Assembly (NCBI GenBank): GCA_030704615.1
Contig: CM060734.1
Span: 36,890,001 to 36,954,000 of the forward strand
Reading direction: 5' to 3'
Origin: Takakia lepidozioides
Taxonomy: Eukaryota > Plantae > Bryophyta
Length of the DNA stretch: 64,000 nucleotides
Shown: piece by piece, positions 4,730-61,487 of the stretch
Layout of the letters: every line of letters begins with the position of its first letter
Numbering within the stretch: position 1 is the first letter of the stretch
Made by a program: the position numbers and the translations under genes
The notes under the pieces: model-generated
Database searches by the model: none
What the model was told of the DNA's origin: nothing
Seen by the model: only the letters and a program-made list of their open reading frames with translations

Positions 4730-6990
4730 CCACATTTTTCCCTTTTCCAGGGCTGCCAGGCTTGCACAAGCATTGCCAACGCACACAAACGTGATGTGGT
4801 TGCACTTCACATTTTCCCTAGCATTTGTTCATAGGTCTGCAAGGCCTCCATCCTGCGCCCCTGCTGGCATATCCTGCAAGCAATAACACTGCCTCCGCAT
4901 CCTCAATGCTCCCACATTTGGCATCCATGTCCATGAGGGTATTGTTCATAATCACATCTGGTACAATTCCAGCTTTGGCAATGCAACCATGCACCTTTTT
5001 GCCCTTCTCCAGGGCTGCCAGGCTTGCACACGCACTGCAAATGCACACAAACCTGATCAGCCCAAAACAAATGGCCAGCTTCTCACTGTGGTGGCAAAGA
5101 GAAAATTCCTTTTCCTCCTTCCCCACATCATGAAATACAAAGCGCGTGTCAGGCACATACCCCGCCTCCTTTCATCTACCCAGACAATCTTCTCAGCTCA
5201 GCATGGATTTTCCTTAATTCTGGGATGCAACTTGTCATCTACAGCGAAGGTGTGCACCCTGTTGCAAATCTCAATGCAGCAGCGACTTGGCCCTAACCCC
5301 TCTCACCTTCATCATTCTTCTCACCAACTCCTGCTTTTGCGATGCAACCATGCACCCCCTTCCCTCATTTCCAGGGCTGCCAGGCTTGCAAACACACAAA
5401 CGTGATGTGGTCGGGCTTCACCCCTTCCCCCATCATTTGTTCATAGGTCTCCAAAGCCTCCATCCCACGTCCCTGCTGTGCATACCCTGCAAGCATCGCG
5501 TTCCATGACACCACATTTCATTCAGCGATATAGTTGAACACTGCCTTCGCATCCTCGATGCTCCCACATTTGGCATACATGTCCACGAGGGCATTGTTCA
5601 GAATAACATCGGGTACAATTCCAGCTTTGACGATGTTACCATGGACCTCTTTTCCCTTTTCCAGGGCTCCCAAGCTTGCACACGCATTGCAAACACAAAC
5701 TAAGGTGATGTGGTTGGGCTTCACCCCTTCGCAGAGTACACATAAGTTCCTTGCTTTGCATCCTCAATGCACCCACATTTGGCATACATGTCCACCAGGG
5801 CAGAGTTCAGAATGAAATCTGATACAATCCCAGCTTTGACAATGTCACCATGGACCTCTTTACCCTTTTCCAGGGCTGTCAGGCTTGCACAAGCATTGGA
5901 ATCACAAACAAACGTGATGTGGTTGGGCTTCACCCCCTCCCCCATCAATTGATCATAGGTTTCCAAAGCCACCAACCCACGTCCCTGTTGTGCATACCCT
6001 GCAAGCATAGCGTGCCACGACACCACATCTTGTTCAGCCATAGTGTTGAAAACTCCCTTCGCATCCTTGGCATGAATCCACTTTGGATAATGTGAGTGTG
6101 CACCTGTTTTCCAGCTTCCAGACCTTTCATCTTGATGCACTTAAGCAAGAGACAGACAAACGTATCTGAATCTACTGAAATGCCTCCCACATTAATTGGC
6201 ATACATATCCACGAGGGTATTGTGGGCTAGGGAAATGTATTGAGCGAGGAAAAAATAACCTCGGAGTACAGACCATGAGGATGAGAAAGGGGACACGGGG
6301 ACACCGCCCCAACCTAAAAACAGGAAGAGCTGCAGGAAACTAAGGACAAGAAGATTCCGCAACGAGGGTATGGAGCTGTGAAGGACTAGAAGCTGGCGTT
6401 CACGGTTCTAGTGCCTAGAAGAAAAGAAAGAAAGATGGGCCATATTTTTGAACACTCCCTTTGCATCTTCGATGCTGCCACATTTGGCATACATGTCCAC
6501 GAGGGCAGTGTTCAGAATGACATTTGGTACAAGTCCAGCTTTGATTACGTCACCATGGACCTCTTTGCCCAGGGCTGCCAGGCTCACACACGCATTTTCC
6601 AGGGCTGCCAGACTTGCACACGCATTGCAGACGCAAACGAACGTGATGTGGTTGGGCTTCACCCCTTCCCCCATCATTTGCTCCTAGGTCTCCAAAGCCT
6701 CCACCCCACGTCCCTGCTGTGCATACCCTACAAGCATCGCGCTCCACGACACCACATCTCATTCAGCCTGCATATTGTTGAAAACTGCCTTTGCATCTTT
6801 AATGCACCCACATTTGGCATACATATTGTCCACCAGGGCAGTGTTCAGAATGACATCTGGTACAATTCCAGCTTTGACGAGGTTATCATGGATCTTTTTC
6901 CCCTTTTCCAGGGCTCCCAAGCTTGCATACACATTGCAAATGCAACCGAACGTGATGTGGTTGGGCTTCACCCCTTCCCGCATCATTTGC
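4730..6990 (-). pseudogene. Scrambled PLS-class PPR fragments with an internal truncated DYW piece (~5052-5293)
   Basis: Repeated P/L/S motifs ([47 protein letters not shown]) in shifting frames. [34 protein letters not shown] is joined directly to an L motif. Confidence 0.9.
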
Positions 6991-6999
6991 TCATACGCT

Positions 7000-7940
7000 T
7001 GTATCTCTGTTTACCAACTTTGAAAGTCTCGAGGCTGAGCCAAACACCCAGGCCCTTTTGGGGCCTAGTTATTAGGCAAACCACACATAGCAGGTTGATG
7101 CTTGAGTAAAGGGATTTCTAGAGGATATCTGGAAAACCCGGATCAATTGTTTATTCCAAGGTAAGTCTAACTACGGGAGTCGGCCCCTAACAAAGGTAGG
7201 TTCTGTCCCTTTGTGTTCCGCTCAAACTGGGCGCGGAGTCAATGGCCACAATTAAATCCTGGCGGAAGAAGCGGTTTTCAGGGATCTGATTCTGAGTCCG
7301 CAAGTCTTGACCCTGCTGGATAATTCTGACCTGGAGGCTGTGGGGTCCAAAGCCATGTCTGTTGTTAGGATCTTGATTTCCTTCATTTAGTAGGCCAGAG
7401 TGGCTGCATGCAGAGAGAACACATATAAAGGTGATACGATGGAGGATTCAACCAACCCCGAATCCAAATAACCTCTAGTGTGCGTTGTTTAGGTGTGTAG
7501 TCCGATGATCTTGGGTGGGTCTGTGAGAACCACCACGGAGTTGCTGAGCAGCCATAGTTTCAAGACGGTCTCCCAAAATTAAGAAGATCCTCCCAAGTAC
7601 CTTGTAAACACTAAGAAAAACCCTTGCGCAATGCAATTTCATGGCCTGTTTAGGAACAACAACCTATGATACAGACAGGGACAACCACTTTTGCAGAATA
7701 GAAAACCTTCTTTACATCATGTAAGAAGAAAACCCACACCTTGCTATGTAGGTTGTCCCACCATTGTGAAGGATAAATATGCTCACCTTTTTTCCTCTGG
7801 AGAACGCTCTCCTGGATGCGCCGTTTAAAGAAATGTCCTCCGCACAGTCGAGCTCTTTCTAACCCTTCTTGACACTTCATGGCTGTATATTATAGATCGC
7901 CTCGGCAAGCCAAACCTAGCTAAACCTGCTCTAAATGCCA
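7000..7940 (-). mobile_element. Possible degenerate LTR-retrotransposon remnant (PBS plus gag-like piece)
   Basis: Minus-strand TGGCATTTAGAGCAGGTTT (~7921-7939) resembles a tRNA-iMet primer-binding site. The ORF that follows contains SQWWDNL (gag-like WW). Confidence 0.3.
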
Positions 7941-9399
7941 GGCCTTATCAACCTATGTAGCCATTGCGCTCTCTCTCTCTCTCTCTCTCTCTCCTTTGAA
8001 CATCAAACAGAAGCAGGGAGGAAAAGGGTCAGTCTCGACAAAGTACCGTTCAAGAAGTTAGTTTTGGATTTTTCGGGCAATCCGGGCAGATAGAAAGAAA
8101 TTGACGACGTACGAAATGTGGCTACGACAGGTGGCGACGAAACGTGGCGATGATGACGTGGCACTATGGTACCCTATTCCTGCTCTATGCTAATCTAGCT
8201 CTCGGTCGTCGCTAGAATTGCCCTATTTAGTCCACCTTTGCAGTAGACCCTACGTCAGCAGACCCGGGCCGGGTCAGGGTGGCGGCAGGGCCACCCAAAA
8301 CCACGGGCCACTACTATCCAGGGCCCACGTGAGCCTTAAAGACCCAATTATTCAACAATGAGAAGCAATGTTATGAGCACTCATTCGTTATTTGTGGTTT
8401 GAGTGCAGTTTAGTTGACTATGTCATTTTAGATATGAGTCAAATGTTTAATCCTAAACCCTGATGCCATGTGTCCTTCAAGAGTTGACGCCTTGGAGATA
8501 TAGCATTATGTACCACTCACATAACATTTTATATACTACCCTAGGAATAGAATAGCAAAATTCCGGAGAATAGAAAATTGGTGTCTCACACTAAGCATCT
8601 TTCACTAGGATGAGTAACGAGGACCTTTCTTCTTGGTTCATAGACTGATCATTGCAGGTCGGAAAGACACGCACTCATGATGTTTCTTGTGAGTGAGGGA
8701 ATGTATGGTGTTTTTTTATCTATGGAATACACAAGCTGATAGGGGCCGCAAACATGTGAAAAGCCCGTTCTCTAGCTCTTTACCAAGCGTAAAAAATAAT
8801 TTTAAATTTTTTGGCGTTCCTCTTCAACTTTTTGGGCAAACTGGTCTTTCTCCTTCGTGCTTCTTGGTTTCTGTGCACGCTTGGTGCTGGTTTGCTTTTG
8901 CTGTCTGGTTTCGTGCTGTTGTTTCGATTGGTTGTTCTTCGTGCTATTGGTTGTAGCCATAGGATATGGTTCTAACACGATATTGGAGAGAGAAGAATTT
9001 CAGCAGAATAAAAAGCACTGTATCGCGTCAATTTCGGATGTTACTACAATCTCCATTTTTGTCGCAGATCCGCTTATTTTAGATTCGCAGACTATGGGGA
9101 CTGCTGGGATCTATTCCGTTGAATGAAGAGTACAAGGCTTTGATGCAACTGGTTTTGAATGCATCCGAATTGATTGAAGAGTCGTTACCTGCTATTCACG
9201 ATGAATTTGGTTCTGTTCCAAATTTATATTCTGAGGAACCTTTGATGTTGTGGACAAGGTTGTGGAACTTAAAGTCAAGGATGACAAATTCGAGGATGAA
9301 TTCGATGATCATCAAGACTATACAACTAGACTTTCTCGTTTTGAAACTGACAATCTCTTCAACCCTGAGGAAGACTTTGATGACGATGGTGACATAATA

Positions 9400-14237: not shown

Positions 14238-16626
14238 ATGAGTGAGGAGTGTGCAAGAGCGATGGACTTGAATTTCAGGCCCAGTCAAGCTTTTCGATTG
14301 TTGCCAGATATCGAGGTAGCTGATGATAGCGATGGAACGCAGATCAGTAGCCAACCACTCACAAGTGACTCAGATGACGGATACAATGAAAGGTATAAAC
14401 ATGCAAATGATGGAGGTCAAAGTGAGGATGATGGCCTTGAAAATTTCTAGTGGGGCCAGGGAGAGGATTCCCAAGTTGAATTTTAGGTGGGCCAAGGCCA
14501 AGCCCAAGATCAAGTTGAATTTCAGGTGGACCAAGGCCAACGTCAACCAGAATCTGCAGTACATCTAGACCAGACAACAACATTGCCAGAGACAAATACT
14601 GAAGGACCTGCCGACATTAACACTCTTCGATCTGATGGACCTGCTATGCGTGGGGGCCGCCCAAGGAGATGGAGGAGGCCTCTCAAGAATGGAAACTGGA
14701 CTGATGAACAGTTGCGAGGTGTCGTGGCTGCCGTTGACCGTGGAGACAGCATCAGATCCGCAACAAGGATGTTTGAAGTGCCTGCAACAAGTATGAGAAA
14801 CCACGTTTATGGCGTTACTACCAGTAGGAAGAGAGGCAGCAAAGGGACATTAAACGCCAAGGAAGAAGCTGAACTAGTCCAGTATATTGAAAAAATGCAA
14901 GATATTGGGCATCCATTGACACTAACTCAACTACGTCTGAAGGTGGCTGAAGTTACGCAAGAGAGAGTCACACCTTTCACAAATGGAATCACGGGCTGGG
15001 GGTGTGAGATGGTTCAGGTCACGACATCCACATCTTTCATTGAGAGTAGCTCAAGGACTAGAAACTGGGAGGGCCAAGGGACTATGTCCAGAGAACGTAA
15101 AGCAATCTAACCTGAAACTGATGTATGAGAAGCACAACTATGGGCCAACAATGATATGGAATTGTGACGAGTCCGGGGCCCAAGCTGGGCGAAACGGAGG
15201 TGCTGTTGTGCTGGCCAAGACCGGATCCAAATTTGTTCATTCTATAACACCAGATCAGAGGGAGTGGCTGAGCGTCCTCACCTGCATGAGTGCTACAGGA
15301 AGTTACATCCCAAACTTCTACATATTCAAAGGGAAAAGATTCCGTCGCAATTACATTCACAAATGTGAATCTGGAGCAACAATGGCAATGCAAAGAAAAG
15401 CATGGATGACTGCAATATTGTTTCACAAGTGGATATCACATTTTCTGGAATCAGCAAAGGCAATGGGCAATGACATTACTGTCACAAAGCAAGATCAGTA
15501 GGACTTGATGTCATTACACTTCCTTCCCACACATCCCATGCACTCCAGCCCCTTGATGTGGCAGTGTTCAAGCCCTTTAAGACTGCCTTCAGGAAATATA
15601 GAGATGTTTGGACCATGGCACATAAAGGAAGAGGAGCGTTGAAAGAAGATCTGGCCCAATGGGTCTCCCTTGCATTGAAAAAAGGACTAACCCCTACCAA
15701 CATTGCCAAGGGATTCAAGACCTCTGGGATCTGGCCTCTGAATCCAGAAACCATGGCAAGAAAGATGGGGCCGGCAGAATGTTTCTCAGGGCCGGGGACA
15801 CCAGACCTGCACGCCGAGGAGATCAGGCCAGAATCAATGGACGAGGATACACTTGAGGGGGAGGTAGAAGACGTACTTTCTGCCCTTCATGTGGAAGAGG
15901 TGTTGGGCAACCATGTGCCCAGCATACAAGAGAATCACCACCACTACTTTGTGGTGGTCAAAGAGCTATATGAGGATGGGCGCAATGACCAGGAAAGGGG
16001 CGATGACAACCAGCCACACTTTCGCAGTAGCCAGGAGTCCTTAGTGCAGCTCGATGATGACGCAGACTGGGAGAAGGTTCCTAGCCAGCCAGAGGTCCCT
16101 TCATCAATCTCCCGATTCTTGACGCTCCCAGAGGCTCCTGCAGTCAATCGAAGGGTAAGAGCATTAGGAGATGAACCTATTATAGACTACAACAAGTCAA
16201 TTATAATGACATCTGATGTATACTTGGCAGCACTAGAGCAAAAAGTGAGACTAAAAGAAGAAGCAACCCAAGCTCGTGAGCAGAAAAAAGAGGAGACCCT
16301 GCACGGTAAAGCAAAGCGGGCAGCCGAGAAGATCGAGAAAGATGCTCTCAAGAAGGCCCGAACACAAGAGCGACTGGCCAGGAGGGCCTTCGATGCAAGT
16401 GGTCGGCACGAGCCTATAGCGAGGCAGGAGAATGTCTGCATGCAACAATCAAAGCAAACAACCCCTCCCCAAGCATGCATGGATCGCCCCATTGTGCGGG
16501 TGGGCTCCACCAATCTGTAAACACAATAAAAAAATTGCTATTGCTAAACGTCGGGCAAAGGCTCGAGGGGAAGACACAAGTCATCTACAGCATCAACCAG
16601 GTTCGGGACCACCTGTTGTAGAGTGA
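14238..16626 (+). mobile_element. Degenerate pogo/Fot1-type DDE_1 transposase (HTH-psq, CENP-B HTH, DDE)
   Basis: NWTDEQLRGVVAAVDRGDSIRSATRMFEVPATSM, LNAKEEAELVQYI, IWNCDESG and LPSHTSHALQPLDVAVFKPFK. It has a stop at 14448, several frameshifts, and lacks the middle LILDGH motif at ~15490. Confidence 0.9.
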
Positions 16627-21292: not shown

Positions 21293-23034
21293 ATGTCCAG
21301 GCCCAACTCTGGGGCTCCCAGAGTTGTAAGTTATCCCCCGCCTCCAAGAGTTCAAAGTCATCACCCGCCGCTGCATACATTGCATCATCCGACATTGCAT
21401 CCACCTCCACATTATCAAGCTGTTTTGACCCCAGACGTTGGAAGCTCAGGAATAAGCTCAAGCAAGGTTCACATCAGTCCAAGTGTGTTAGTGATTGTTG
21501 TCATTCTGAGTGTGGTGCTCATTCTGTCAGGATTTCTCCACCTGCTTGCTCGATGTTTGGGTAGGCGGTCGGCGCAGCCAAGGGGAAGCCCGCCTCTGAT
21601 TAGTCCTGTGAGTTCTCTACGTGGGCAGCTGCAGCATCTGTTCCACTTGCATGACTCAGGTGTGGAACAGGCATTCATAGATACACTACCTGTGTTCTTT
21701 TATGGGTCTATTCGGGGGTTGAAGGATCGTGCTGACTGTGCGGTGTGTCTGACTGAGTTTGGTGAAGATGAGCGCCTTAGGCTTCTCCCCAAGTGCAAGC
21801 ATGCGTTCCACTTGGAATGTATCGACACCTGATTGCTATCAAATTCGACTTGCCCCCTCTGCCGGCAGACCCTGTTGCCAGAGGCTCCTTCCGCGGTTCC
21901 TCGGCCGGCCAGTAGTTTTGAATCGAGCATGCGTGAGAGGACTGGAGAAATGGAGATGGTCGAAGGGGGTTGTGCACAGGGGCTCCTCCTTGATGAAAAA
22001 ACCAAACAGGGCCCCCGCTACGCCATGGGAGTTTCCGTAACTTCGAGCCTAAGGAAGCGGAACTCGAGGGCGAGAGAATGGTGGAGAGTGAAGATCCCAC
22101 GCTGCCTACAGTTTGTGTGACCGAATCCGACGGTTCGGAGAGGATATTGACAGTGGAGTTAGGGAATGTGAAAATTGATGCCAGGAGAGTGAGTAGTGGG
22201 AGCAATGGAACACGCAGGGCGGGCCGGTCTTACTCAATGGGTTCTTATGAATATATTGTGGATCTATCCAATCTTGAGCTGACCATTGCTCCCACTCCAT
22301 TTCCTGGTCGCCCGCAGAACTGGGCACCTTCGAGACCTACTCACCGTAGTGCCCTTTCGGATAGTATACCAGAACTGGGGAGTGCTGGGGGAACACCTGC
22401 GAATGATGATCTTTTCTGGGCCAGCAGAGGCCTTTACACACCCCAATCTCTCTCTAGAGTGAGAGAGATCATGACACCAAGCCCAGGGCGCGTCGCCTAC
22501 TCCCCGCTTTCAGAATGCCGTGGGTAAACTTCCCCAACATTGGCCAGGAGCTACCAGATCCAGGGGAGCAGTGGATAGCGATCCACAAGGAGGAGCATGT
22601 AACGTGAGCCGATCTTACGTTCTTTCAGGAATGAATGTTGAAATCGACATACCTGTAGACGAAGAGTCCAAGGCAATACTCTTCTCAGCAGCTGAATCGG
22701 TAGCAGAGAGAGAGAGAGCGATTGCTCGCAACGTTCTTCCTCGCTCAGGTTACCCGAAGGAAAAGCTAGTGTGAGTCGATTTCGAAGAACATTATCTGAA
22801 ACAGCAGGTTTGGAGTCAGCCTCAGAGCATGTCGCCCCAGAAGTACCATCGAATGGATCTCTTCCTTCCAGTAGAGGTGAGAGTAGCAAGAACTTATTAC
22901 CAAGTTCAAGGAAGTACACATTCAACTGGCTCATGGGTAGAGACAGAAGGGTGGGTTCAGCTGCTACTCCATCTCCGGTGGATGCTTCCCACAGCATTGA
23001 AAGCAGAGACACAAGTCAAGTGTTGTCTTCCTGA
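21293..23034 (+). pseudogene. ATL-family RING-H2 E3 ligase (ATL13/46-like), disrupted
   Basis: TM helix, HLHDSGVEQAFIDTLPVF, CAVCL...CKHAFHLECIDT*LLSNSTCPLCR (TGG>TGA at 21830) and the RSYSMGSYEYIVD motif. Frame changes occur near 22040, 22520 and 22770. Confidence 0.88.
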
Positions 23035-41090: not shown

Positions 41091-42089
41091 TCACTCGTCA
41101 TCATTGTCATCATCATCACCACCACCACCACCAATCATACCTCTGTCTGGGGCAGACCATGAACCGGACAGATAGAAGGGATCAACAAGGGCATCTACGA
41201 TGCGACGCTCTAGATCCTTCTCCTCTATCCACATGGAGCTTTGCTGCCGCACTGCCTCCTTCTCCTTAGACCGCACCCGAGCCAACCTCTTCTCCCTCCA
41301 CTGCCGGCGTCGTGCTCTCGCTACCCTCTCTTGTTCCTACACGTCACACATGATACAGATCGCGTGTAAGATGAGTTTCAATCTCAACCTATCAGAGCAT
41401 TCAACTTAGCAGGAAACTGCCAAAGCGCTCGCACACCGCAGCCGACCCGGACATGAAACACAAATTTCAGGGTGGACCTTGACATCTTGCTGCAAACAAT
41501 GATGCTGATCCCGGCACTGCCCTGGCATCCTGCCTAACACAGCAATAACGCACTTGGATGTGAATGTCCTCCAAATTGTAGCAAACAGAGACGAAAAAGG
41601 AAAAGGAATGCAAGCTCAACATACAAGCATAATGCGAAGAGCTTTGGCCTCCTCCTCCACTTCGAGCGCACGAGACTGCGACCGCTGTCTCCTGATCACC
41701 AACCGTTGTTCTTTCTCTACCAAAATGCGCTCCCTTACAACTTTCTGTACCTGCATTTCCTCTTTCCTCTTTCTCTCCTGCTCGGCCGCATACTTCTTCC
41801 GCAACACTGACAACTGCTCCTCATACTCTCGTTTCAACACCGACCCAGCACGCGCCTTTCCTTTAAAACCCTTCAGACCCCCACTATCATCAACACCTGA
41901 CTGACCCGGCGCAGTGCTTGATTCCGGCTCCGAGTCGAGTACCGCAGATAAAGGTGCTGCTTGAGGCAAATCGTCTGGAGACGCAGACGATGGAGTTGTT
42001 TCCGAGCTGAGGAACCTGGCACCCACTGTGCAGATTCTCGCGTGATGCTGTAGCAGTGTGCGTAGGTAGGCAATGCGAGAGACTGCCAT
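41091..42089 (-). CDS. Mitochondrial ribosomal small-subunit protein mS26-like (exons 42089-41625, 41336-41091)
   Basis: Presequence ending ...GARFLSS, a long charged helix LKREYEEQLSVLRKKY..., and C-terminal RQQSSMWIEEKDLERRIVDALVD, similar to plant mS26. Confidence 0.7.
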
Positions 42090-42289
42090 GGATCTGCCAC
42101 ACTCTTCTTTCACAAACCCCCTTCTCTTCTCTGTCTCCCCCCCAAACCTTTTTAGGGTTTAAGCCAAGTCTGGAGTCATGTATTTACCTACTCGAAAAGA
42201 ACTTAGGCTAAGTGGGGTCTATCGTGGAAATCTGATTTATCTCAACCGTTCAAAGTCTTTAAATGAACAGTGTACACATTTCCCCAAAT

Positions 42290-45200
42290 TCTGAGATCTG
42301 GCGGCTGTTCGTTGGACCTTGGCTTGTTCTCAGGCAGTCGCCATAGACAAGGCCCTGTCTTGCTCTTGTGATGAAGGGGATGGAGGCTTCAAAGAATGCA
42401 GAAGATGGAAGGGTCAGGATGGGGAGCTGAAATGCGAGCACATCCTGATAATGCCGGGCCAGAGAGCTTTGCAAGTGATTGCTTTGACGGATTCCGAGCC
42501 TACAGGGGAACGGACGAGAGGTATAAAAGTTAACTCTGTTGCCTGATTTTCGGGTCTCTAAACTGTGTGAGTCTGACCCCACATTTCCATCAGAGTTTAC
42601 ACCAGTCTTGGTCGTGGAAGTCCATTTTTGGGTCATACAAGGTGCTTTGGATGCAATTGAAACCTTTCTTTTCCTTCCCTCACCTCCTTCTATATTATGG
42701 AAATCTGTGTAATATTTCTCATGTCCCTTAGTGTGTGTGAGAGAGAGAGAGAGAGGGAGAGGTTACTTTTTGCTTGCCTTTCTGGGTAAGATACTCATCA
42801 GGTTTTAGCTCCTGGGGGAATTTTTGACAGGGTTTCAATTGCAGTTCCCATGTTCTTGCAGTTCGTCCAGCAATGAGCATTGAACAGCTCTGGCAGGAGT
42901 TTTTCGTAGATCCTCCCCAGTGGTGGGACCACAGCTTGGGTAAGGTGAGGCGATCTTTATTTAGGACGTGAAAGCTTTTGTTAAGGAGGGCTTATGACTG
43001 ACGCTTGCATGATACTTGCTGACGGGATTATCTCTCCAGTTGCTTATATGAATGACAATTTTGGTGCATTTGGAGGAAAAGTGGCAAATTGGTTCTTACT
43101 GTTGCTTAGCTTCGTCTTCCTTGTCAGTATGGATGAGTGTGGGCAAGATTCTTGGAGCTTTGATGATTGTACGCTGGTCGATGGGGTGGAAAACATTGGT
43201 GCTCACGTAACCGGTGGTTTCTACAGAAAAGTTCAAGGCCACCAGACTTCAGGCATAAGCGCACACGGGATGTCCTTAGGATTGAACACTGGCGGAATCC
43301 TCCTGGGGTGAACGCAGAGCTAGCTGCCTCAATACAAGGTCGAGCACAGTCTGTTGGACGATTGCATGCTGAGGTACACCATAGTGCTCCAGGCCGAGGA
43401 TACAACGGGTATTGTTTTTATGTCGATTTATGGTTCCAAGTCATATAGATATGGACAGAGGTTATTCACAAACCATAGGACTGGACTAGTTTGAGATGCT
43501 GTTCCTAGGTGCGATGAGTGTCCTCATGAAGAGATCTTTTGTTGAAGTACCTGGAAGGTTTCATATGTGTTACTTTTGAATCATGCAGGATAGCAGGGTT
43601 GAATCAGGCACAGTTGTTAGTTGGACATCAGGCTGGTGGCAGGGGTAACACCTCCACTATCACCACTGCTTTTGAGAGAGGACCAAGAGAGGGAATCAAC
43701 GGGAACTCTTTTGGCACCAGTGGAGATGTGAGGACACTATGCCAGACGGGACGACTGAAAGATGCACTACACATTTTGAACCAACCAGGCATTTGGGCAG
43801 ACTCCACAACCTATGTCTGTGTCTTGAAAGAGTGTATCAACACGAAATGCCTAACAGAGGGAAAGCAGGTGCACGCCCACATCATCAGAAATGGATTCAA
43901 GCCAAACATCTTCCTACTCAATACCCTCATCAACATGTATGTTAAGTGTGGGAGCATGGTGGATGCACGCCAAGTGTTTGATAAAATCACGGCACCAGAT
44001 ATGTATACGTGGAATTCCATGGTGGCTGGATATGCCAAGCTTGGGTACACTAAGGAGGCTTTAGAGATCTATGAGCAAATGCAACTGGAAGGGGTCTCTC
44101 CTGATAAGATCACATTTAGTTGCGTTCTGAATGCAGTTGCCACCCTAGGTGCCTTGGAAAAGGGTAAAGAGGTGCATGCTGACATCATCAGAGCAAGGAT
44201 TGTACCGGATATCATTCTGGAAACAGCCCTAACTGACATGTATGCCAAGTGTGGGAGTGTAAAGGATGCACGTTACGCATTCAACAATATGTCTAAACCA
44301 GATGTGGTCTCATGGAACGCGATGATTGCAGGATATGGTCAGCATGGATGTGGTAGAGAAGCTCTCGATATCTATGAGCAAATGAAATGGAAAGGGGTGA
44401 CTCCCAACAGGAGCACATTTATTAGCCTTCTGCATGCATGTGCCAACTTAGGAGCCCTGGAAAAGGGCACAGAGATCCATGCTGACATCATCAAAATGAG
44501 AATTGCAGCAGACACCAATCTGGAGACTGCCCTTGTTGACATGTATGCGAAATGTGGGAGCCTAACAGATGCACGTAAAGCCTTCAACAAAATGGCTCAA
44601 CCAGATGTGGTCTCATGGAATGCCATGATCACAGGATATACACAGCATGGGTGTGGCAGGGAGGCTTTGGAGATGTATGAGGAAATGATCCGAAAAGGGG
44701 TGACGGCTGACAGGATCACATTCGTATGCATTCTCAATTCATGTGCCAGTCTTGGAGATCTGGAGAAGGGCAAAGAGGTCCATGCTCATTTGAGCAGAAG
44801 TGAAATTGTGCCCAATATCATTTTGGAGAATACCCTTATTGACATGTATGCCAAATGCGGGAGCATAGAGAATGCACGCCATGTGTTCAACAATATGACG
44901 CAACGAAATGTGGTCTCATGGAGTGCTATGATCGCAGGTTGTGCTCAGCATGGGAGTGAAAGGGAGGCCTTTATGTTCTATGAGCAAATGCAACGGGAAG
45001 AAGTGATGCCCAACATTATCACATTTGTTTGCATTCTGAATGCATGTGCCAGCCTAGGAGCCGTGGAAAGGGGTAAAGAGGTTCATGCGGACATCATCAA
45101 AGCTGGAGTCACTCCAGATATCATTCTGGAGACTGCCCTTGCTGACATGTACGCGAAATGTGGGGACATAAAGGATGCGCGTCAAGTGTTTGACACTATG

Positions 45201-46135
45201 GTTCAAAGAAACGTGGTTTCATGGAATGCCATGCTTGCAGGATATGCCCAGCATGGATGTGGTAGGGAAGCCCTTCAACTATTTGAACAGATGCAATATG
45301 AAGGTTTGAAGCCAGATAACATCACCTTTACATCTCTTCTCTGTGCATGTAGCCATGTAGGCCTACTGGATGAAAGCCGTCACTATTTTGATTCCATGAG
45401 TCGAGTTCATTGCCTCACTCCTACATTGAAGCATTTTAGCTGCATGGTCGACCTTCTTGGCCGTGCAGGACAATTGGATGAGGCAGAGGCTTTGATTACC
45501 AGAATGCCAATCGAACCAGGGGGTTCGGTTTGGGGGGCTTTGCTTAGTGCCTGCAGGATTCATGGTATGTGGAGGTGGCAGAGCGTGTGACTCATTGCCG
45601 TCTCAAGTGGGATCCACAGCATGCTCCCACTTATGTGCTGCTATCAAACGTCTATGCTGCAGCTGGCAGGTGGGATGATACAGCAAAGGTGAGGAAAATG
45701 ATGGAGGACAGAGGGGTCAGAAAGGAACCAGGGCGCAGCTGCATTGAGGTGGACAACCATGTGCATACATTCTTTGTCGAAGACACAACTCATCGACAAA
45801 TTGAGGAAATCCATGCTGAGCTAAAGAGATTGTCTGGATGGATGAAGGAGGCTGGGTACATGCCTGACACTCGCTTTGTATTGCATGATGTGGAGGAGGA
45901 GCGAAAGGAATTTTCGCTGTGCTACCACAGTGAGAAGCTGGCCATTGCTTTTGGGCTCATTAGCACACCCCCTGGGACAACTATCCGGGTCATGAAGAAC
46001 CTTCGTGTGTGCGGTGACTGTCATACGGCCACCAAGTTCATCTCAAAGATTGTTGGCAGAGCAGTTGTTGTCCGGGACGCCAACCGCTTTCACCACTTTC
46101 AAGATGGGGTTTGTTCTTGTGGGGATTACTGGTGA
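42290..46135 (+). CDS. PDF-motif + PLS-PPR (17 motifs)-E-DYW protein, paralog A; exons ~42290-42520, 42862-42944, 43227-43408, 43589-46135; 1-nt deletion at ~45567 (pseudogene or assembly error)
   Basis: Splice phases 1/0/2 are all in frame. Contains [19 protein letters not shown]|[16 protein letters not shown] triplets, PGRSCIE, HSEKLA, CGDCH and CSCGDYW. CATGGTATGTGGAG lacks one A relative to HGNVE. Exon 1 has no in-frame ATG; one exists at 42873. Confidence 0.85.
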
Positions 46136-56139: not shown

Positions 56140-59100
56140 TCACCAGTAATCCCCACAGGAACAAACCCCATCTTGGAAGTGGTGAAAACGGTTGGTATCC
56201 CTTACAACAACTTCCCGCCCAGTAATCTTAGAGATAAACTTGGTGGCAGTGTGGCAGTCGCCACACACACGAAGGTTTTTTATGATGCGGATAGGCATTC
56301 CGGGTGGTGTGTTGATGAGCCCAAAAACAATGGCCAGCTTCTCACTGTGGTAGCGAAGAGAAAATTCCTTTTGCTCCTCCTCCACATCATGCATTACAAA
56401 GCATGTATCAGGCACATACCCAGCCTCCTTCATCTGCCCAGACAAGCTATTCAGCTCATTATGGATTTCCTCAATTTGTGGATGCAATTTGTCTTCTACG
56501 ACAAATGTATGCACTTGGTTGTCCACCTCAATACAGCTGCATCCTGGCTCCTTTCTGACACCTCTCTCCTCCATCAATTTTCTCATCTTTTCTTTTTCTT
56601 CCCACCTGCCAGCTGCAGCATAAATGTTTGATAGCAGTACATAAGCTGCAGCACATTGGGGATCACTCTTAAGAAGGCTTTTTGCTGCATGTTCTGCTAG
56701 CTCCAGGTTACAATGGATTCTGCAGGCACCAAGTAAAGCCCCCCATACCGAAGCATCTGGTTTGATTGGCATTTTGGTAATGAAGTCCTCTGCCTCATCC
56801 AATCGCCCTGCACGGCCAAGCAGCCCCACCATGCAGCCAAAATGTTCCACTGTAGGTGTGAGGCCATAGTCTCGACTCATGGAATCAAAGAAGTGACGAC
56901 CTTCATCCACTAAGCCCACATGGCTACATGCGGAGAGAAGAGACATAAAGGTAACATTGTCTGGTTTCAAGCCTTCCAGTTCCATTTGTGCAAATAGTTT
57001 CAGGGCCTCCCTACCACACCCATGCTGAGCATATCCTGCAATCATTGCAGTCCATGAAACCACATTTCGTTGAGTCATGTTCTCAAACACTTGGCGTGCA
57101 TCTTTCATGCTCCCGCATTTGGCATACATATCAACAAGGGCAGTCTCCAGAATGATATCTGACGCAATTGCAGCTTTGATGATGTATGAATGGACTTCTT
57201 TGCCCTTTTCCAGGGCTTCTAGGCTGGCGCACACTTTGAGAATACAAGTGAACGTGACCCTGTCGCATGTCACCCCTTCCCGTTGCATTTGGTCAGAGAC
57301 CTCAAAAGCCTCCCTACCACACCCACGCTGAGCATATCCTGCAATCATTGCATTCCATGAGACCAAATTTTGCTTAGCCATGTTATCAAACACTTGTCGC
57401 GCATTCACCATGCTCCCACATTTGGCGTACATGTTGACAAGAGCAGTCTCGAGAATGACATCTGGTGGAATTCCAGCTTCGATGATGTCAGCATGGACCT
57501 CTTCGCCTTGTTCCAGAGTTCCTTGGCTTGCACACGCATTGAGAATGGAAGTGTACGTCACCCTATCAGGGGTCACACCTCTCCTCTTCATTGTATCGTA
57601 TATCTCAAAAGCCACCCTGCCACACCCCTGCTTCGCATATCCTGCGATCATTATAGTCCATGTGAACATGTCCCGTTCAGGCATTTTGTCAAACACTTGA
57701 CGTGCCTCTACTAAGCTCCCGCACTTGACATACATGTTCACAAGGGCAGTTTCCAGTACAATATCTGGTGCAATTCCAGCTTTGATGATGTCAGCATGGA
57801 CTTCTTTGCCCTTATTTAAGGCTCTTACGCTGCCACATGCATTGAGAATGCATATGAACATCACTGTGTCGGGCATCACCCCTTCCCGTTGCATTTGTTC
57901 ATAGATTTTGAGTGCATCCCTACCAGCCCCATGTTTAGCATATCCTCCTACCATAATAGTCCACGTAAACATATTACGTTCAAGCATCTTATCAAAAACT
58001 CGGCGTGCATCGACCATGCTCCCGCACTTGGTATACATGTTGAGAAGGGTGTTGAGTAGAAAGATATTTGGCTTGAATCCACTTTGGACAATGTGGGCAT
58101 GTACCTGTTTTCCCGCTGTTGGGGATTTCATGTTGATGCACTCCTGCAAGAGGCAAACATAGGTACTGGAGTCTGCCCAACTGCTTTGGTTCAAAATATG
58201 GAGTGCCTCTTTCAGTCGTCCTGCTTTACATAGTGTCCTCACAGCCCTCCCAGTTTCAGAAGCCTTCATCTTCACTACGTCTCTGGGTCCAAGTGCATTG
58301 GTGTTGGTGAGACCCGTCTCATCTCCTACCAAGAAATGTGCCTGATTCAACTCTGCCATCCTCCATGACACAGTTTTACATTTGTTAACACTCCAAACAC
58401 ACATGATACATCTCAATCCTCCTGAATACCTCAAAGATAGCCCTCTCTCTTAAGGACAGGCTTTTTGCTACATATCAGCAAAGTTGCAAAACACTACTGC
58501 AGTCACTTTCTTCGAGTTTAAACGGTACCATTTCTATCTGTTACAGTTGGAACCTTTGAATGATCATCAAAAAAATACCAGTTGTCTTTTAGCCCTGGAG
58601 CTCCATGGCGTATGGCGACCTTAGAAGCATCACCAGCCTGTGATCGACCTTTTACCATGGAAATAAATTCTGCTTTTAACCAAGGAGGGCCCAACCGACG
58701 CTCAATCCAAAGGACCTCCTTTATGCGCTCAAGTCTGAAGTCCGATGATCGTGGATTTCTCTGCAACCACCATGAGCAGGAAGCTGAGCATCCACAGTTC
58801 CACCAGGGAACCAAACTACCACCACCCAAGCTTCAATCTTGAACAGCCCACTTTCATGCCCTGCAAACAAGGAAGAATCTGCTGCTAGCACCATATGATT
58901 TTGATTTTGCTGCTTTCCACCACAATGAGAACAATGCCATTAATGGTAAGCAATTGTATATACAGCCGACTGCGCAAAACCAGCATGCCATCTGTCACAA
59001 ACCCTTATTGACAAATTACCTTACATTATAAATGAAGATAATTTTACCTTCTCAAACTTGTTGTCCCAACGCCATGAAGGATCCGAGAAAAACTCCTGCC

Positions 59101-59908
59101 AGAAGTGCTCTTTGCTTCCGGCTTGACCTGTGTGCAAGAACTGCAAGAACATCAGCTTTGACAGCTCCAATCACCTTAGCCACTCTGAGGAGTGCTACTG
59201 TTGCATTAAATGCTTTTTCGCACACACAATGAGAATACAAACAGAAGCTTCCAGGTGTTGCAGAAGTTACTAAAGGAAATTCTGGTGGCAAGGTTTTACA
59301 TCGGACTTTACAATTAGTCTTCACAATCCACTTTGGCACTGGCCTCTCTTTCTTACTCTTGTCCCACACGTAACGAGTCCTTCTTTGTTTCTCTATCTCA
59401 ATCAAGGAAGACATGTACATCAGAAGTTTCACACATTTCGAGAGATAACGCAGGAGCTCATGGACCAAGGACAAGGATATAGAATACACTTACTTTCCTC
59501 TACAGCCCTTGTGTGACTGTAAAATTGAGCTAATTTGTTTTATAAAATGCATGTAGCGCCTTCTGGGATGGGTAACAGATAAATGAAGCCTGGATCGCTC
59601 CCTTGCAAACAGTGAGACCAAAGAACATATGCAAGGACTTGACCTTTCCTCGCTTTCTCTGGATGAAGGGGAGAAGTCGCAGCCCTCTCTTGCAAGGGTA
59701 TCCAGCCCGCTATCGCCAAGGTGGATGCCCACCTGAGCTCCACACCCTGACCCGTAAATTTTCTGCATTGTGTAAGGCCTCCAGCTCTTTGGTGGCAAAG
59801 ATACGAACAAGCCTCGGGTATGGTCTTACGCTTTGCGCGCAGGAGAGCACCCGCGCACGTTGCTGTCCGTGTGCCTATATCCACACGACACAGATTGCTG
59901 CGAGCCAT
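56140..59908 (-). CDS. PDF-motif + PLS-PPR (14 motifs)-E-DYW protein, paralog B; exons 59908-59644, 59127-59048, 58760-58579, 58360-56140 (915 aa if spliced so)
   Basis: Exon lengths 265+80+182+2221=2748 nt keep frame. Contains a presequence with [27 protein letters not shown]|[20 protein letters not shown], and intact PGCSCIE, HSEKLA, CGDCH and CSCGDYW. The last acceptor is a weak GAG. Confidence 0.88.
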
Positions 59909-60479: not shown

Positions 60480-61487
60480 ATGGAGGGAGTAGAGGAGCAG
60501 TCAGGTGTGCAGGAGGAGCAGCATCATGGGCCTTACACTGTGGACCAGCTTCAGGTATGTGGGATTGCAGCAGTGGACATAAAAAAGCTGAAGGAGACAG
60601 GTTATTGCACTGGGGAGGCCGTTGCATTTTCTTCAAAGAAGGAGCTTTTGATGATCACAGGCATGAGCGAGGCAAAGGTCGATAAGTTTACTGAAGCTGC
60701 TACTAAGCTGGTGCCTACGGGGTCTACAGGTACCAGACAGATGCATGAGCAGCGCGCAAGGACCATTAGAATCTCCACGGGCTCCAAGGAACTGGACAAG
60801 ATTCTTGAAGGCGGCATTGAAACAGGGTCAATCACTGAAATCTATGGAGAGTTTAGGACTGGAAAGAGCCAGTTATGTCATACGATGTGTGTCACTTGCC
60901 AGCTTCCTCTTGACCAGGGGGGAGGTGATGGCAGAGCTCTGTACATTGATACAGAAGGCACCTTCAGACCGCAAAGGCTGTTGCAAATTGCCGAAAGGTA
61001 TGGATTGAATGGAACTGATGTCCTAGACAACGTCGCATATGCCCGCGCCTACAACACAGATCATCAATCAAAGCTCCTGATGGAAGCAGCATCGATGATT
61101 GCTGTCACAAGGTTTGCTCTGATCGTGGTAGATAGTGCTACTGCTCTGTACCGCACAGATTACTCAGGCCGTGGTGAGTTGTCCGCCAGGCAAGTGCATC
61201 TGAGAAGGTTTTTAGGAAGCCTCCAGAAGCTGGCTGATGAGTTTGGAGTAGCAGTTGTTGTTACAAATCAGGTGGTGGCGCAAGTTGATGAAGGAGCGGT
61301 GTTTGATGGTCCTCGTATCAAGCCAATTGGTGGCAACACCATGGCCCATGCTTCAACAACCAGATTGGGTTTGCGCAAGGGGCGGGGCGCGGAGCGGATC
61401 TGCAAGGTGCATTCCTCTCCCTGCCTGGCTGAGCGGGAAGCAAGATTCCAAATCGCTGCCGAGGGTGTCACAGATGTAAAATATTGA
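60480..61487 (+). CDS. RAD51: RAD51 recombinase, intronless, divergent
   Basis: 335 aa with N-terminal HhH, Walker [19 protein letters not shown], Walker [28 protein letters not shown]. Confidence 0.95.

What the first reader, a model, noticed from the sequence alone, without database searches (positions are those of the whole stretch)
42290..46135. Second PDF-PPR-DYW paralog with matching exon architecture indicates a gene family, not chance adjacency
Seen: paralog A has the same four-exon layout, the same intron phases and an identical 182-nt exon 3. Its leader exon is homologous ([12 protein letters not shown] vs [12 protein letters not shown]). Its motif [53 protein letters not shown] keeps a literal PDF. 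The PPR array differs in length (17 vs 14 motifs) and in code residues. Inference: the fusion predates the duplication, and the PDF exons stayed in frame while the arrays were re-targeted, which suggests selection on a modular family of editors.
Basis: partly seen in the sequence, partly recalled or inferred. Interest (0 to 1): 0.8.

Follow-up and report, generated by a model that had tools for sequence, protein, structure and literature searches.

The report
Damaged PDF-PPR-DYW RNA-editor gene copy
This is a second copy of a plant gene for an organelle RNA-editing enzyme (PPR-DYW type) that carries in front the small 'PDF' module of OSB single-stranded-DNA-binding proteins. The combination is an old gene family of seed-free plants, but this copy as assembled has a one-base deletion and no start codon at the expected place.

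Summary
The exon layout is real. Copy A (42295-46135, +) and copy B (56140-59908, -) share four exons, GT-AG introns, phases 1/0/2 and a 182-nt exon 3.

A PDF profile built only from other species hits six of 3356 reading-frame segments in the window. These are the two halves of the motif, in order, upstream of A, of B and of a third decayed copy C (about 4736-7780, -).

The fusion is old. About 100 annotated PPR proteins of Diphasiastrum, Sphagnum and Calypogeia carry the motif. It matches the C-terminal PDF of a Marchantia SSB-domain (OSB-type) protein at E 1.6e-16.

- A 1-nt deletion at 45566/45567 cuts the E-DYW deaminase out of frame, with a stop at 45588.
- A has no ATG where B starts.

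The downstream frame is still open and has not evolved faster than B's. The damage is therefore very recent or an assembly error.

Selection on the PDF codons is modest (dN/dS 0.45, against 0.23-0.27 for PPR and DYW). The linker and leader evolve neutrally.

I found no paper on this architecture. The scan has already noted it many times elsewhere in this genome.

The parts
42295..42520 (+). Copy A exon 1 (leader, presumed transit-peptide exon). It is open after TGA 42292-42294, and has no ATG at the site homologous to B's start.
   Evidence: The donor GAGAG|GTATAA aligns with B's donor. dN/dS against B is 1.0.
42862..42944 (+). Copy A exon 2 (83 nt): first half of the PDF motif, ...[24 protein letters not shown].
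   Evidence: PDF HMM positions 1-23, E 1.5e-9, 35.5 bits. AG acceptor and GT donor present.
43227..43408 (+). Copy A exon 3 (182 nt): second half of the PDF motif ([32 protein letters not shown]) plus a 28-codon linker.
   Evidence: PDF HMM positions 19-53, E 8.8e-10, 36.2 bits. No Pfam family matches.
43589..45590 (+). Copy A exon 4, first frame: PLS-type PPR array (five 101-aa P-L-S units plus P2-L2-S2) ending in a premature TGA at 45588-45590.
   Evidence: Pfam PPR families, E 1e-97. Periodicity and code residues.
45566..45567 (+). Site of the 1-nt deletion relative to copy B. It shifts the frame between the PPR array and the E1 motif.
   Evidence: Pairwise DNA alignment of A and B. ORF list.
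45569..46135 (+). Copy A exon 4, second frame: E1/E2, E+ and the DYW deaminase (HSE and CGDCH present, ends ...CSCGDYW). It is open for 188 codons.
   Evidence: Pfam DYW_deaminase E 1.9e-45, E_motif 4.4e-14, Eplus 0.0019. dN/dS 0.23. No rate excess against B.
56140..59908 (-). Copy B. Exon 1 is 59908-59644 (starts with ATG), exon 2 59127-59048, exon 3 58760-58579 (182 nt), exon 4 58360-56140 (open PPR-E-DYW, 739 codons).
   Evidence: PDF HMM gives E 6.6e-8 for exon 2 and 6e-8 for exon 3.
4736..7780 (-). Copy C: a decayed pseudogene with the same layout. It has a remnant of PDF half 1 (about 7778-7740, ...PSQWWDNLHSK|GT), a remnant of PDF half 2 (about 7520-7420, THPRSSDY...), and PPR and DYW fragments in several frames with stops.
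   Evidence: tblastn pieces in different frames. Three-frame translation. PDF HMM E 7.9e-5 and 0.034. Junction sequences.

Best explanation
Copy A belongs to a local cluster (A, B, C within 55 kb) of nuclear genes for organelle-targeted PLS-class PPR-E-DYW editing factors, which convert C to U in organelle RNA. In front of the RNA-reading repeats these genes carry one PDF module, the about 50-residue motif that binds single-stranded DNA in OSB proteins.

Shown:
- The module is encoded by two small exons split by a phase-0 intron at a conserved point of the motif.
- The fusion is ancient and shared with lycophytes, Sphagnum mosses and a liverwort.
- After duplication, A gained or kept one more P-L-S triplet and a different recognition code than B, so it was aimed at a different RNA site.
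- As assembled, A cannot make the full protein. One base is missing before the E1 motif, which cuts off the deaminase, and the start codon used by B is absent.
- The downstream frame is untouched.

Inferred:
- A is most likely a very young pseudogene, in a family that turns over by birth and death.
- In intact members the PDF module adds non-specific binding of single-stranded nucleic acid at the N-terminal (5') side of the PPR tract. That could raise affinity for the transcript or hold the editor at the nucleoid.
- The PDF module is under weaker constraint than the PPR and DYW parts.
For: - Layout, splice sites and phases.
- Motif significance: a PDF HMM built from 129 instances in other species hits only the six predicted exon pieces of A, B and C among 3356 segments.
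- Cross-species fusion, first sample: 13 of the 120 best PPR-DYW relatives carry the motif N-terminally (Diphasiastrum, Calypogeia, JGI sequences).
- Cross-species fusion, region searches: these gave about 100 PPR proteins of Diphasiastrum and Sphagnum.
- Link to OSB: the Marchantia 'single-strand DNA-binding protein' P0208 has Pfam SSB PF00436 plus a C-terminal PDF. It matches at E 1.6e-16 with 65% identity over 55 residues.
- Same split point elsewhere: P0105 reads through an intron at HMM positions 21/22. Truncated models P0003, P0114, P0172 and P0174 start at HMM positions 20-23.
- Lesions in A.
- dN/dS: PPR 0.27, E-DYW 0.23, PDF codons 0.45, linker 2.1, leader 1.0.
- Different codes in the arrays: read with the PPR code given in PMC10482289.
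- PDF binds ssDNA in OSB1: PMC6963530 and PMC4166229.
Against: - The E-DYW frame after the deletion is open for 188 codons. It has low dN/dS and no excess of A-specific changes (9-15 against 10-15 for B). The deletion could therefore be an assembly error.
- No reads and no transcripts could be consulted, so splicing of A and B is inferred, not seen.
- A could start at the ATG in exon 2 (42873). Several Diphasiastrum models begin at the equivalent Met.
- Nobody has tested what PDF does in a PPR protein.
- OSB proteins prefer ssDNA to RNA (PMC4166229).
- Moss editors work in E. coli without any N-terminal region (PMC6397227, PMC10482289).
- Both A and B have lost conserved motif residues.
- AlphaFold gives only low confidence for the module.
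Confidence: 0.6

Rival explanations
1. Copy A is a working gene. The 1-nt deletion is a sequencing or assembly error, and translation starts elsewhere, at the exon-2 ATG, at ATG 42451 or in an unseen upstream exon.
For: - The frame after the shift is open for 188 codons with dN/dS 0.23.
- There is no rate acceleration in A.
- A's PDF halves score better against the cross-species HMM than B's, 35.5 + 36.2 against 30.2 + 30.4 bits.
- Catalytic HSE and CxDCH are intact.
Against: - Two independent defects fall in one gene.
- The deletion is not in a long homopolymer (GGT-ATG), where assembly indels usually fall.
- A start in exon 2 would leave no transit peptide.
- A dead copy C lies in the same cluster, so gene death is common here.
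Confidence: 0.3
2. In this genome the PDF exons are vestigial. They are still spliced in but no longer functional, kept in frame only because a frameshift there would kill the editor downstream.
For: - dN/dS is 0.93 over the whole of exon 3 and 1.0 in exon 1.
- Exons 2-3 are barely more conserved than the introns.
- B has SDF and RLE in place of PDF and KHK. A has lost two conserved Trp residues.
- Known moss editors need no N-terminal domain (PMC6397227).
Against: - The 53 motif codons alone give dN/dS 0.45, p 0.02.
- Each copy still matches the cross-species consensus at 30-31 of 53 positions.
- The motif is strongly conserved in about 100 paralogs of Diphasiastrum and across mosses and a liverwort.
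Confidence: 0.25
3. The PDF exons are not part of the PPR gene. They would be a separate small gene, or a chance juxtaposition.
Against: - The same order, strand and phases occur three times in the window.
- The conceptual junction restores the exact 10-residue spacing of the contiguous motif.
- Annotated proteins of other species carry PDF and PPR in one chain.
- No OB-fold/SSB domain lies nearby.
Confidence: 0.03

Closest known systems
PLS-class PPR-E-DYW organellar C-to-U RNA editing factors (e.g. Physcomitrium PPR56, PPR65)
   Same: Alternating P/L/S repeats with a 101-aa period, then P2-L2-S2, E1/E2, E+ and a DYW deaminase with HxE and CxxCH. These genes are nuclear, with a presumed transit-peptide leader. 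Best matches are such proteins at 50-55% identity.
   Different: A PDF module encoded by two extra exons precedes the array. The characterised moss editors in my hit list (Physcomitrium and Funaria entries) lack it. Copy A is also frameshifted before E1.
[quoted passage not shown]
   Same: They share the about 50-residue PDF motif (LWQxFFxDPxQWWDNRxxKxxPxxPDFKHKxTxExLW...NPxWV). The match of the PPR-borne motif to the Marchantia protein is E 1.6e-16 with 65% identity.
   Different: OSB proteins have an SSB-like OB fold with the PDF at the C-terminus, and they act on DNA recombination. Here there is no OB fold, and the PDF sits N-terminal to an RNA-binding array and a deaminase.
Unnamed PDF-PPR proteins of Diphasiastrum complanatum, Sphagnum spp. 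and Calypogeia fissa in public proteomes
   Same: The same architecture: one to four PDF copies, then PLS repeats, often E-DYW. The same split point of the motif is seen where gene models are truncated or read through the intron.
   Different: They are only about 50-55% identical in the PPR part. Their motifs are much closer to the consensus than those of A and B.

Membership tests
PLS-class PPR-DYW editing factor | Tandem PPR repeats of P, L and S types | tested here: met
   Pfam PPR_2 1.4e-97, PPR 6.1e-92. Five P-L-S units at a 101-aa period.
PLS-class PPR-DYW editing factor | E1/E2 and E+ motifs followed by a DYW deaminase with HxE and CxxC zinc ligands | tested here: met
   E_motif 4.4e-14, Eplus 0.0019, DYW_deaminase 1.9e-45. 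HSE, CGDCH and a C-terminal DYW are present.
PLS-class PPR-DYW editing factor | One uninterrupted coding frame from the start codon through PPR to DYW | tested here: not met
   The 1-nt deletion at 45566/45567 gives a stop at 45588-45590. There is no ATG at the start homologous to B. This holds for the assembly as given; reads were not available.
PLS-class PPR-DYW editing factor | C-to-U editing of a defined organellar site | not testable with these tools
   This needs an editing assay or a knockout. Only the code residues could be read.
OSB (organellar ssDNA-binding) family | PDF motif | tested here: met
   The cross-species PDF HMM hits A exon 2 at E 1.5e-9 and exon 3 at 8.8e-10. The HMM family includes the Marchantia SSB-domain protein P0208, which scores 93 bits.
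OSB (organellar ssDNA-binding) family | Central SSB-like OB-fold domain | tested here: not met
   No PF00436 or other OB-fold hit in any exon of A or B. A is therefore not an OSB protein; it only shares the module.
OSB (organellar ssDNA-binding) family | Binding of single-stranded DNA by the PDF motif | not testable with these tools
   Known for AtOSB1 from the literature (PMC6963530). Untested for PPR-borne PDF modules.

The most novel reading that the evidence does not exclude
The PDF module is a working accessory domain of RNA-editing factors throughout seed-free land plants. It would be a single-strand nucleic-acid clamp that tethers PPR-DYW editors to nascent transcripts or to the organellar nucleoid. 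That would make it an ancestral helper function in lineages that edit heavily. It would also show exon-level exchange between the organellar DNA-maintenance and RNA-editing machineries.
Probability: 0.3. Interest if true: 0.75.

Novelty: new variant of a known kind. Interest (0 to 1): 0.5.

Why it matters
PPR-DYW editors are intensively studied and engineered as programmable RNA base editors. The characterised editors in my hit list carry no extra module, and I found no description of one.

A conserved extra module, taken from proteins that bind single-stranded organellar DNA, occurs in about 100 annotated PPR proteins of one lycophyte proteome and also in Sphagnum mosses and a liverwort. Its role could be tested directly: editing assays with and without the module, and binding assays on RNA and DNA. 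No Pfam family matched the motif, which may be why annotation has not flagged it.

This locus adds a smaller point. The family turns over quickly, and here the PDF part is less constrained than the PPR and deaminase parts.

Tried and rejected
- Pfam on exons 2 and 3 of A and B: no family.
- PDB sequence search with each exon 3: nothing meaningful; the best hit was E 0.36 to RecF, which is chance.
- ESM Atlas with a complete motif (P0033 residues 1-62): no usable hit.
I could fetch no genomic DNA of Diphasiastrum, Calypogeia or Marchantia genes. Intron positions outside the window rest on protein-level clues only, and the comparison with a real OSB gene could not be made.
- AlphaFold2 of a Sphagnum PDF-PPR protein (P0209, 40-sequence alignment). 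The PPR solenoid is confident, but the PDF region has pLDDT of only 43-73: a helix, a two-strand bridge (WWD with FKH) and a helix. That is too weak for a fold search, so none was run.
- Relative conservation of PDF against PPR among Diphasiastrum paralogs: 0.84 against 0.83 against 0.87 for DYW. This is uninformative, because the sampled paralogs are all recent.
- Literature: searches for PDF motif or domain with DYW or pentatricopeptide, and for the motif strings, returned nothing on the fusion. A 2026 OSB family survey (PMC13393729) does not mention PPR.
- The word search had already given the relatives.
- The joined (spliced) protein model was never built or searched. Every exon was searched and scored separately by reference.
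- A reading frame starting at the ATG conserved in both copies (A 42396, 'MQK...') was considered and rejected. It leaves phase 2 at the donor, which does not fit exon 2.
Full report
**What is at the coordinates**

The window holds three PPR-DYW genes.
- Copy A runs from about 42295 to 46135 on the + strand. This is the finding.
- Copy B runs from 59908 to 56140 on the - strand.
- Copy C is a decayed copy at roughly 7780 to 4736 on the - strand.

Pfam finds PPR families (E 1e-97), the E motif, the E+ motif and the DYW deaminase in A and B. It finds nothing in the small upstream exons.

**Check of the layout**

I located the boundaries on the sequence.
- In A the leader exon ends at 42520 (GAGAG|GTATAA). 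Exon 2 is 42862-42944 (83 nt), exon 3 is 43227-43408 (182 nt), and exon 4 starts at 43589.
- In B, exon 1 is 59908-59644, exon 2 is 59127-59048 (80 nt), exon 3 is 58760-58579 (182 nt), and exon 4 starts at 58360.
- All six introns are GT...AG, and the junction phases are 1, 0 and 2 in both copies.
- A pairwise DNA alignment gives 70% identity in exon 2 and 64% in exon 3, with no indel in exon 3.
- The 3' 125 nt of exon 1 are 63% identical. The introns are 51-60% identical, with many gaps.

'Identical exon 3' means identical length, not identical sequence.

**Is the PDF motif more than chance?**

Each was searched on its own by reference, and the joined model was left out.

I built a profile from 129 motif instances found in proteins of other species. 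None of them came from this window. I ran it against all 3356 stop-to-stop segments of the six frames of the window. Six segments stand out:

| Piece | E-value | HMM positions |
|---|---|---|
| A exon 2 | 1.5e-9 | 1-23 |
| A exon 3 | 8.8e-10 | 19-53 |
| B exon 2 | 6.6e-8 | 1-23 |
| B exon 3 | 6e-8 | 21-52 |
| C exon 3 remnant | 7.9e-5 | 19-48 |
| C exon 2 remnant | 0.034 | 11-21 |

The next best segment has E 4.6. The two halves lie in the right order upstream of each PPR array. The conceptual junction leaves exactly 10 residues between WWD and PDF in A and B, as in contiguous proteins of other species.

**Is it the OSB motif, and is the fusion a family?**

- A word search with B's exon 4 returned PPR-DYW proteins at up to 55% identity. 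Of the 120 listed, 13 carry the motif N-terminally. Nine are from Diphasiastrum complanatum, one from Calypogeia fissa and three are JGI sequences.
- None of the Ginkgo, Cryptomeria, Pinus, Phoenix, Physcomitrium, Funaria, Ceratodon or Adiantum entries in that list has the motif.
- Two region searches with complete motifs of Diphasiastrum proteins returned about 100 proteins. All but one are PPR proteins, of Diphasiastrum and of three Sphagnum species.
- The exception is P0208, which NCBI names 'single-strand DNA-binding protein' of Marchantia polymorpha. It has 387 residues, a Pfam SSB domain (PF00436) and the motif at its C-terminus. It matches at E 1.6e-16 with 65% identity over 55 residues. 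This is the OSB architecture described in the literature (PMC6963530, PMC4166229, PMC13393729).
- Of all 210 proteins fetched, 103 carry one to four PDF copies.

**Conserved split point**

The JGI protein P0105 reads through an intron exactly between HMM positions 21 and 22. The truncated models P0003, P0114, P0172 and P0174 begin at positions 20-23, which is where exon 3 starts in A, B and C.

This is protein-level evidence only.

A is not intact as assembled.
- Against B, one base is missing between 45566 and 45567: GGT-ATG in A against TGTAAC in B.
- The PPR frame therefore runs into TGA at 45588-45590. E1, E2, E+ and DYW continue in another frame from 45569 to 46135.
- A also has no ATG where B starts. 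An in-frame TGA lies at 42292-42294, the first in-frame ATG is at 42451, and another ATG lies in exon 2 at 42873.

B is open throughout. However, B has a 10-nt insertion behind the acceptor it shares with A. Only the distal AG (exon start 59127) keeps the PDF frame. The proximal AG (59140) leads to a stop inside exon 2.

C has stops and at least four frame changes.

**Selection**

The table gives dN/dS between A and B, exon by exon.

| Region | dN/dS |
|---|---|
| Leader exon | 1.0 |
| 53 PDF motif codons (counts pooled, sequences not joined) | 0.45 (one-sided p 0.02) |
| Linker part of exon 3 | 2.1 (not significant) |
| PPR array | 0.27 |
| E-DYW | 0.23 |

- In the E-DYW part, downstream of the frameshift, A has no more lineage-specific changes than B. 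With ten different outgroups the counts are 9-15 for A and 10-15 for B. The lesion is therefore very young or an artefact.
- Both copies match the cross-species consensus at 30-31 of 53 motif positions.
- B has SDF and RLE where the consensus has PDF and KHK. A has lost two conserved tryptophans.

The PDF part has been under some constraint, but clearly less than the rest of the protein.

**Re-targeting**

A has S-type repeats starting at residues 107, 208, 309, 410 and 511 of exon 4. B has them at 99, 200, 301 and 402. A therefore has one extra 101-aa triplet. Residues at positions 5 and last, in order along each protein:

| Copy | P-type repeats | S-type repeats |
|---|---|---|
| A | ND, NN, ND, SN, ND | ND, TD, TD, NN, TN |
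| B | TD, TD, ND, TD | NN, TD, TN, TN |

With the code given in PMC10482289 these specify different RNA sequences.

**How it most likely works**

Intact members are nuclear-encoded, organelle-targeted editors. The PPR array reads the RNA upstream of the target C, and the DYW domain deaminates it. That follows from established knowledge of the family; moss editors work alone in E. coli (PMC6397227).

The PDF module sits at the N-terminal end, which faces the 5' side of the bound RNA. In AtOSB1 the motif is sufficient for ssDNA binding (PMC6963530). I infer that here it adds non-specific single-strand binding or nucleoid tethering. This is not shown.

AlphaFold gives only a low-confidence small helix/strand/helix unit for the module.

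**Novelty and context**

I found no paper that links PDF and PPR.

The scan has noted the same architecture many times on other DNA of this genome. 322 notes hold the words searched, and follow-up agents reached the same family-level reading. I used those notes as leads only and repeated the tests.

The organism is not identified. It is a seed-free land plant. No protein in the database exceeds 55% identity to B's exon 4.

**Verdict**

The family claim is right, and the architecture appears unpublished. This copy is a damaged member, and the evidence for selection on its PDF exons is modest.

Noticed in passing
window 59127-59140 (-): Copy B has two AG acceptors 13 nt apart in front of exon 2, created by a 10-nt insertion relative to A. 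Only the distal one keeps the PDF frame. The acceptor homologous to A's gives a stop inside exon 2. B's intactness therefore depends on acceptor choice.
   Followed up: partly
window 4736-7780 (-): A third PDF-PPR-DYW copy (C), heavily decayed. It has stops, at least four frame changes, and a DYW fragment followed by extra PPR pieces. It keeps remnants of both PDF exons with their GT and AG sites.
   Followed up: partly
window 60480-61487 (+): An uninterrupted 335-codon RAD51 ORF (Pfam Rad51, E 3.5e-124) lies head to head with copy B, about 570 nt from B's ATG. It has no intron, which is unusual for a plant RAD51 gene. From memory, intronless RAD51 genes are known in the moss Physcomitrium.
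   Followed up: no
window 14487-16520 (+): Three consecutive ORFs in shifted frames, with a DDE_1 endonuclease match (E 1.2e-6). This is probably a decayed pogo/Tigger-like DNA transposon.
   Followed up: no
window 21293-21832 (+): An ORF with a Pro-rich N-terminus, a hydrophobic stretch and a C-terminal RING-H2 finger (zf-RING_11, E 7e-11). It looks like an ATL-type ubiquitin ligase gene.
   Followed up: no
window 42733-42770 (+) and about 7960-7990 (-): A (GT)n(GA)n microsatellite lies in intron 1 of copy A, and a (GA)n run lies at the matching place upstream of copy C's PDF exons. B has only a degenerate trace there.
   Followed up: no
window 41616-42113 (-): A 165-codon ORF with a Lys/Glu-rich coiled-coil tail starts about 180 nt from copy A's leader, on the opposite strand. 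It has no Pfam match. A and B each sit head to head with another gene.
   Followed up: no
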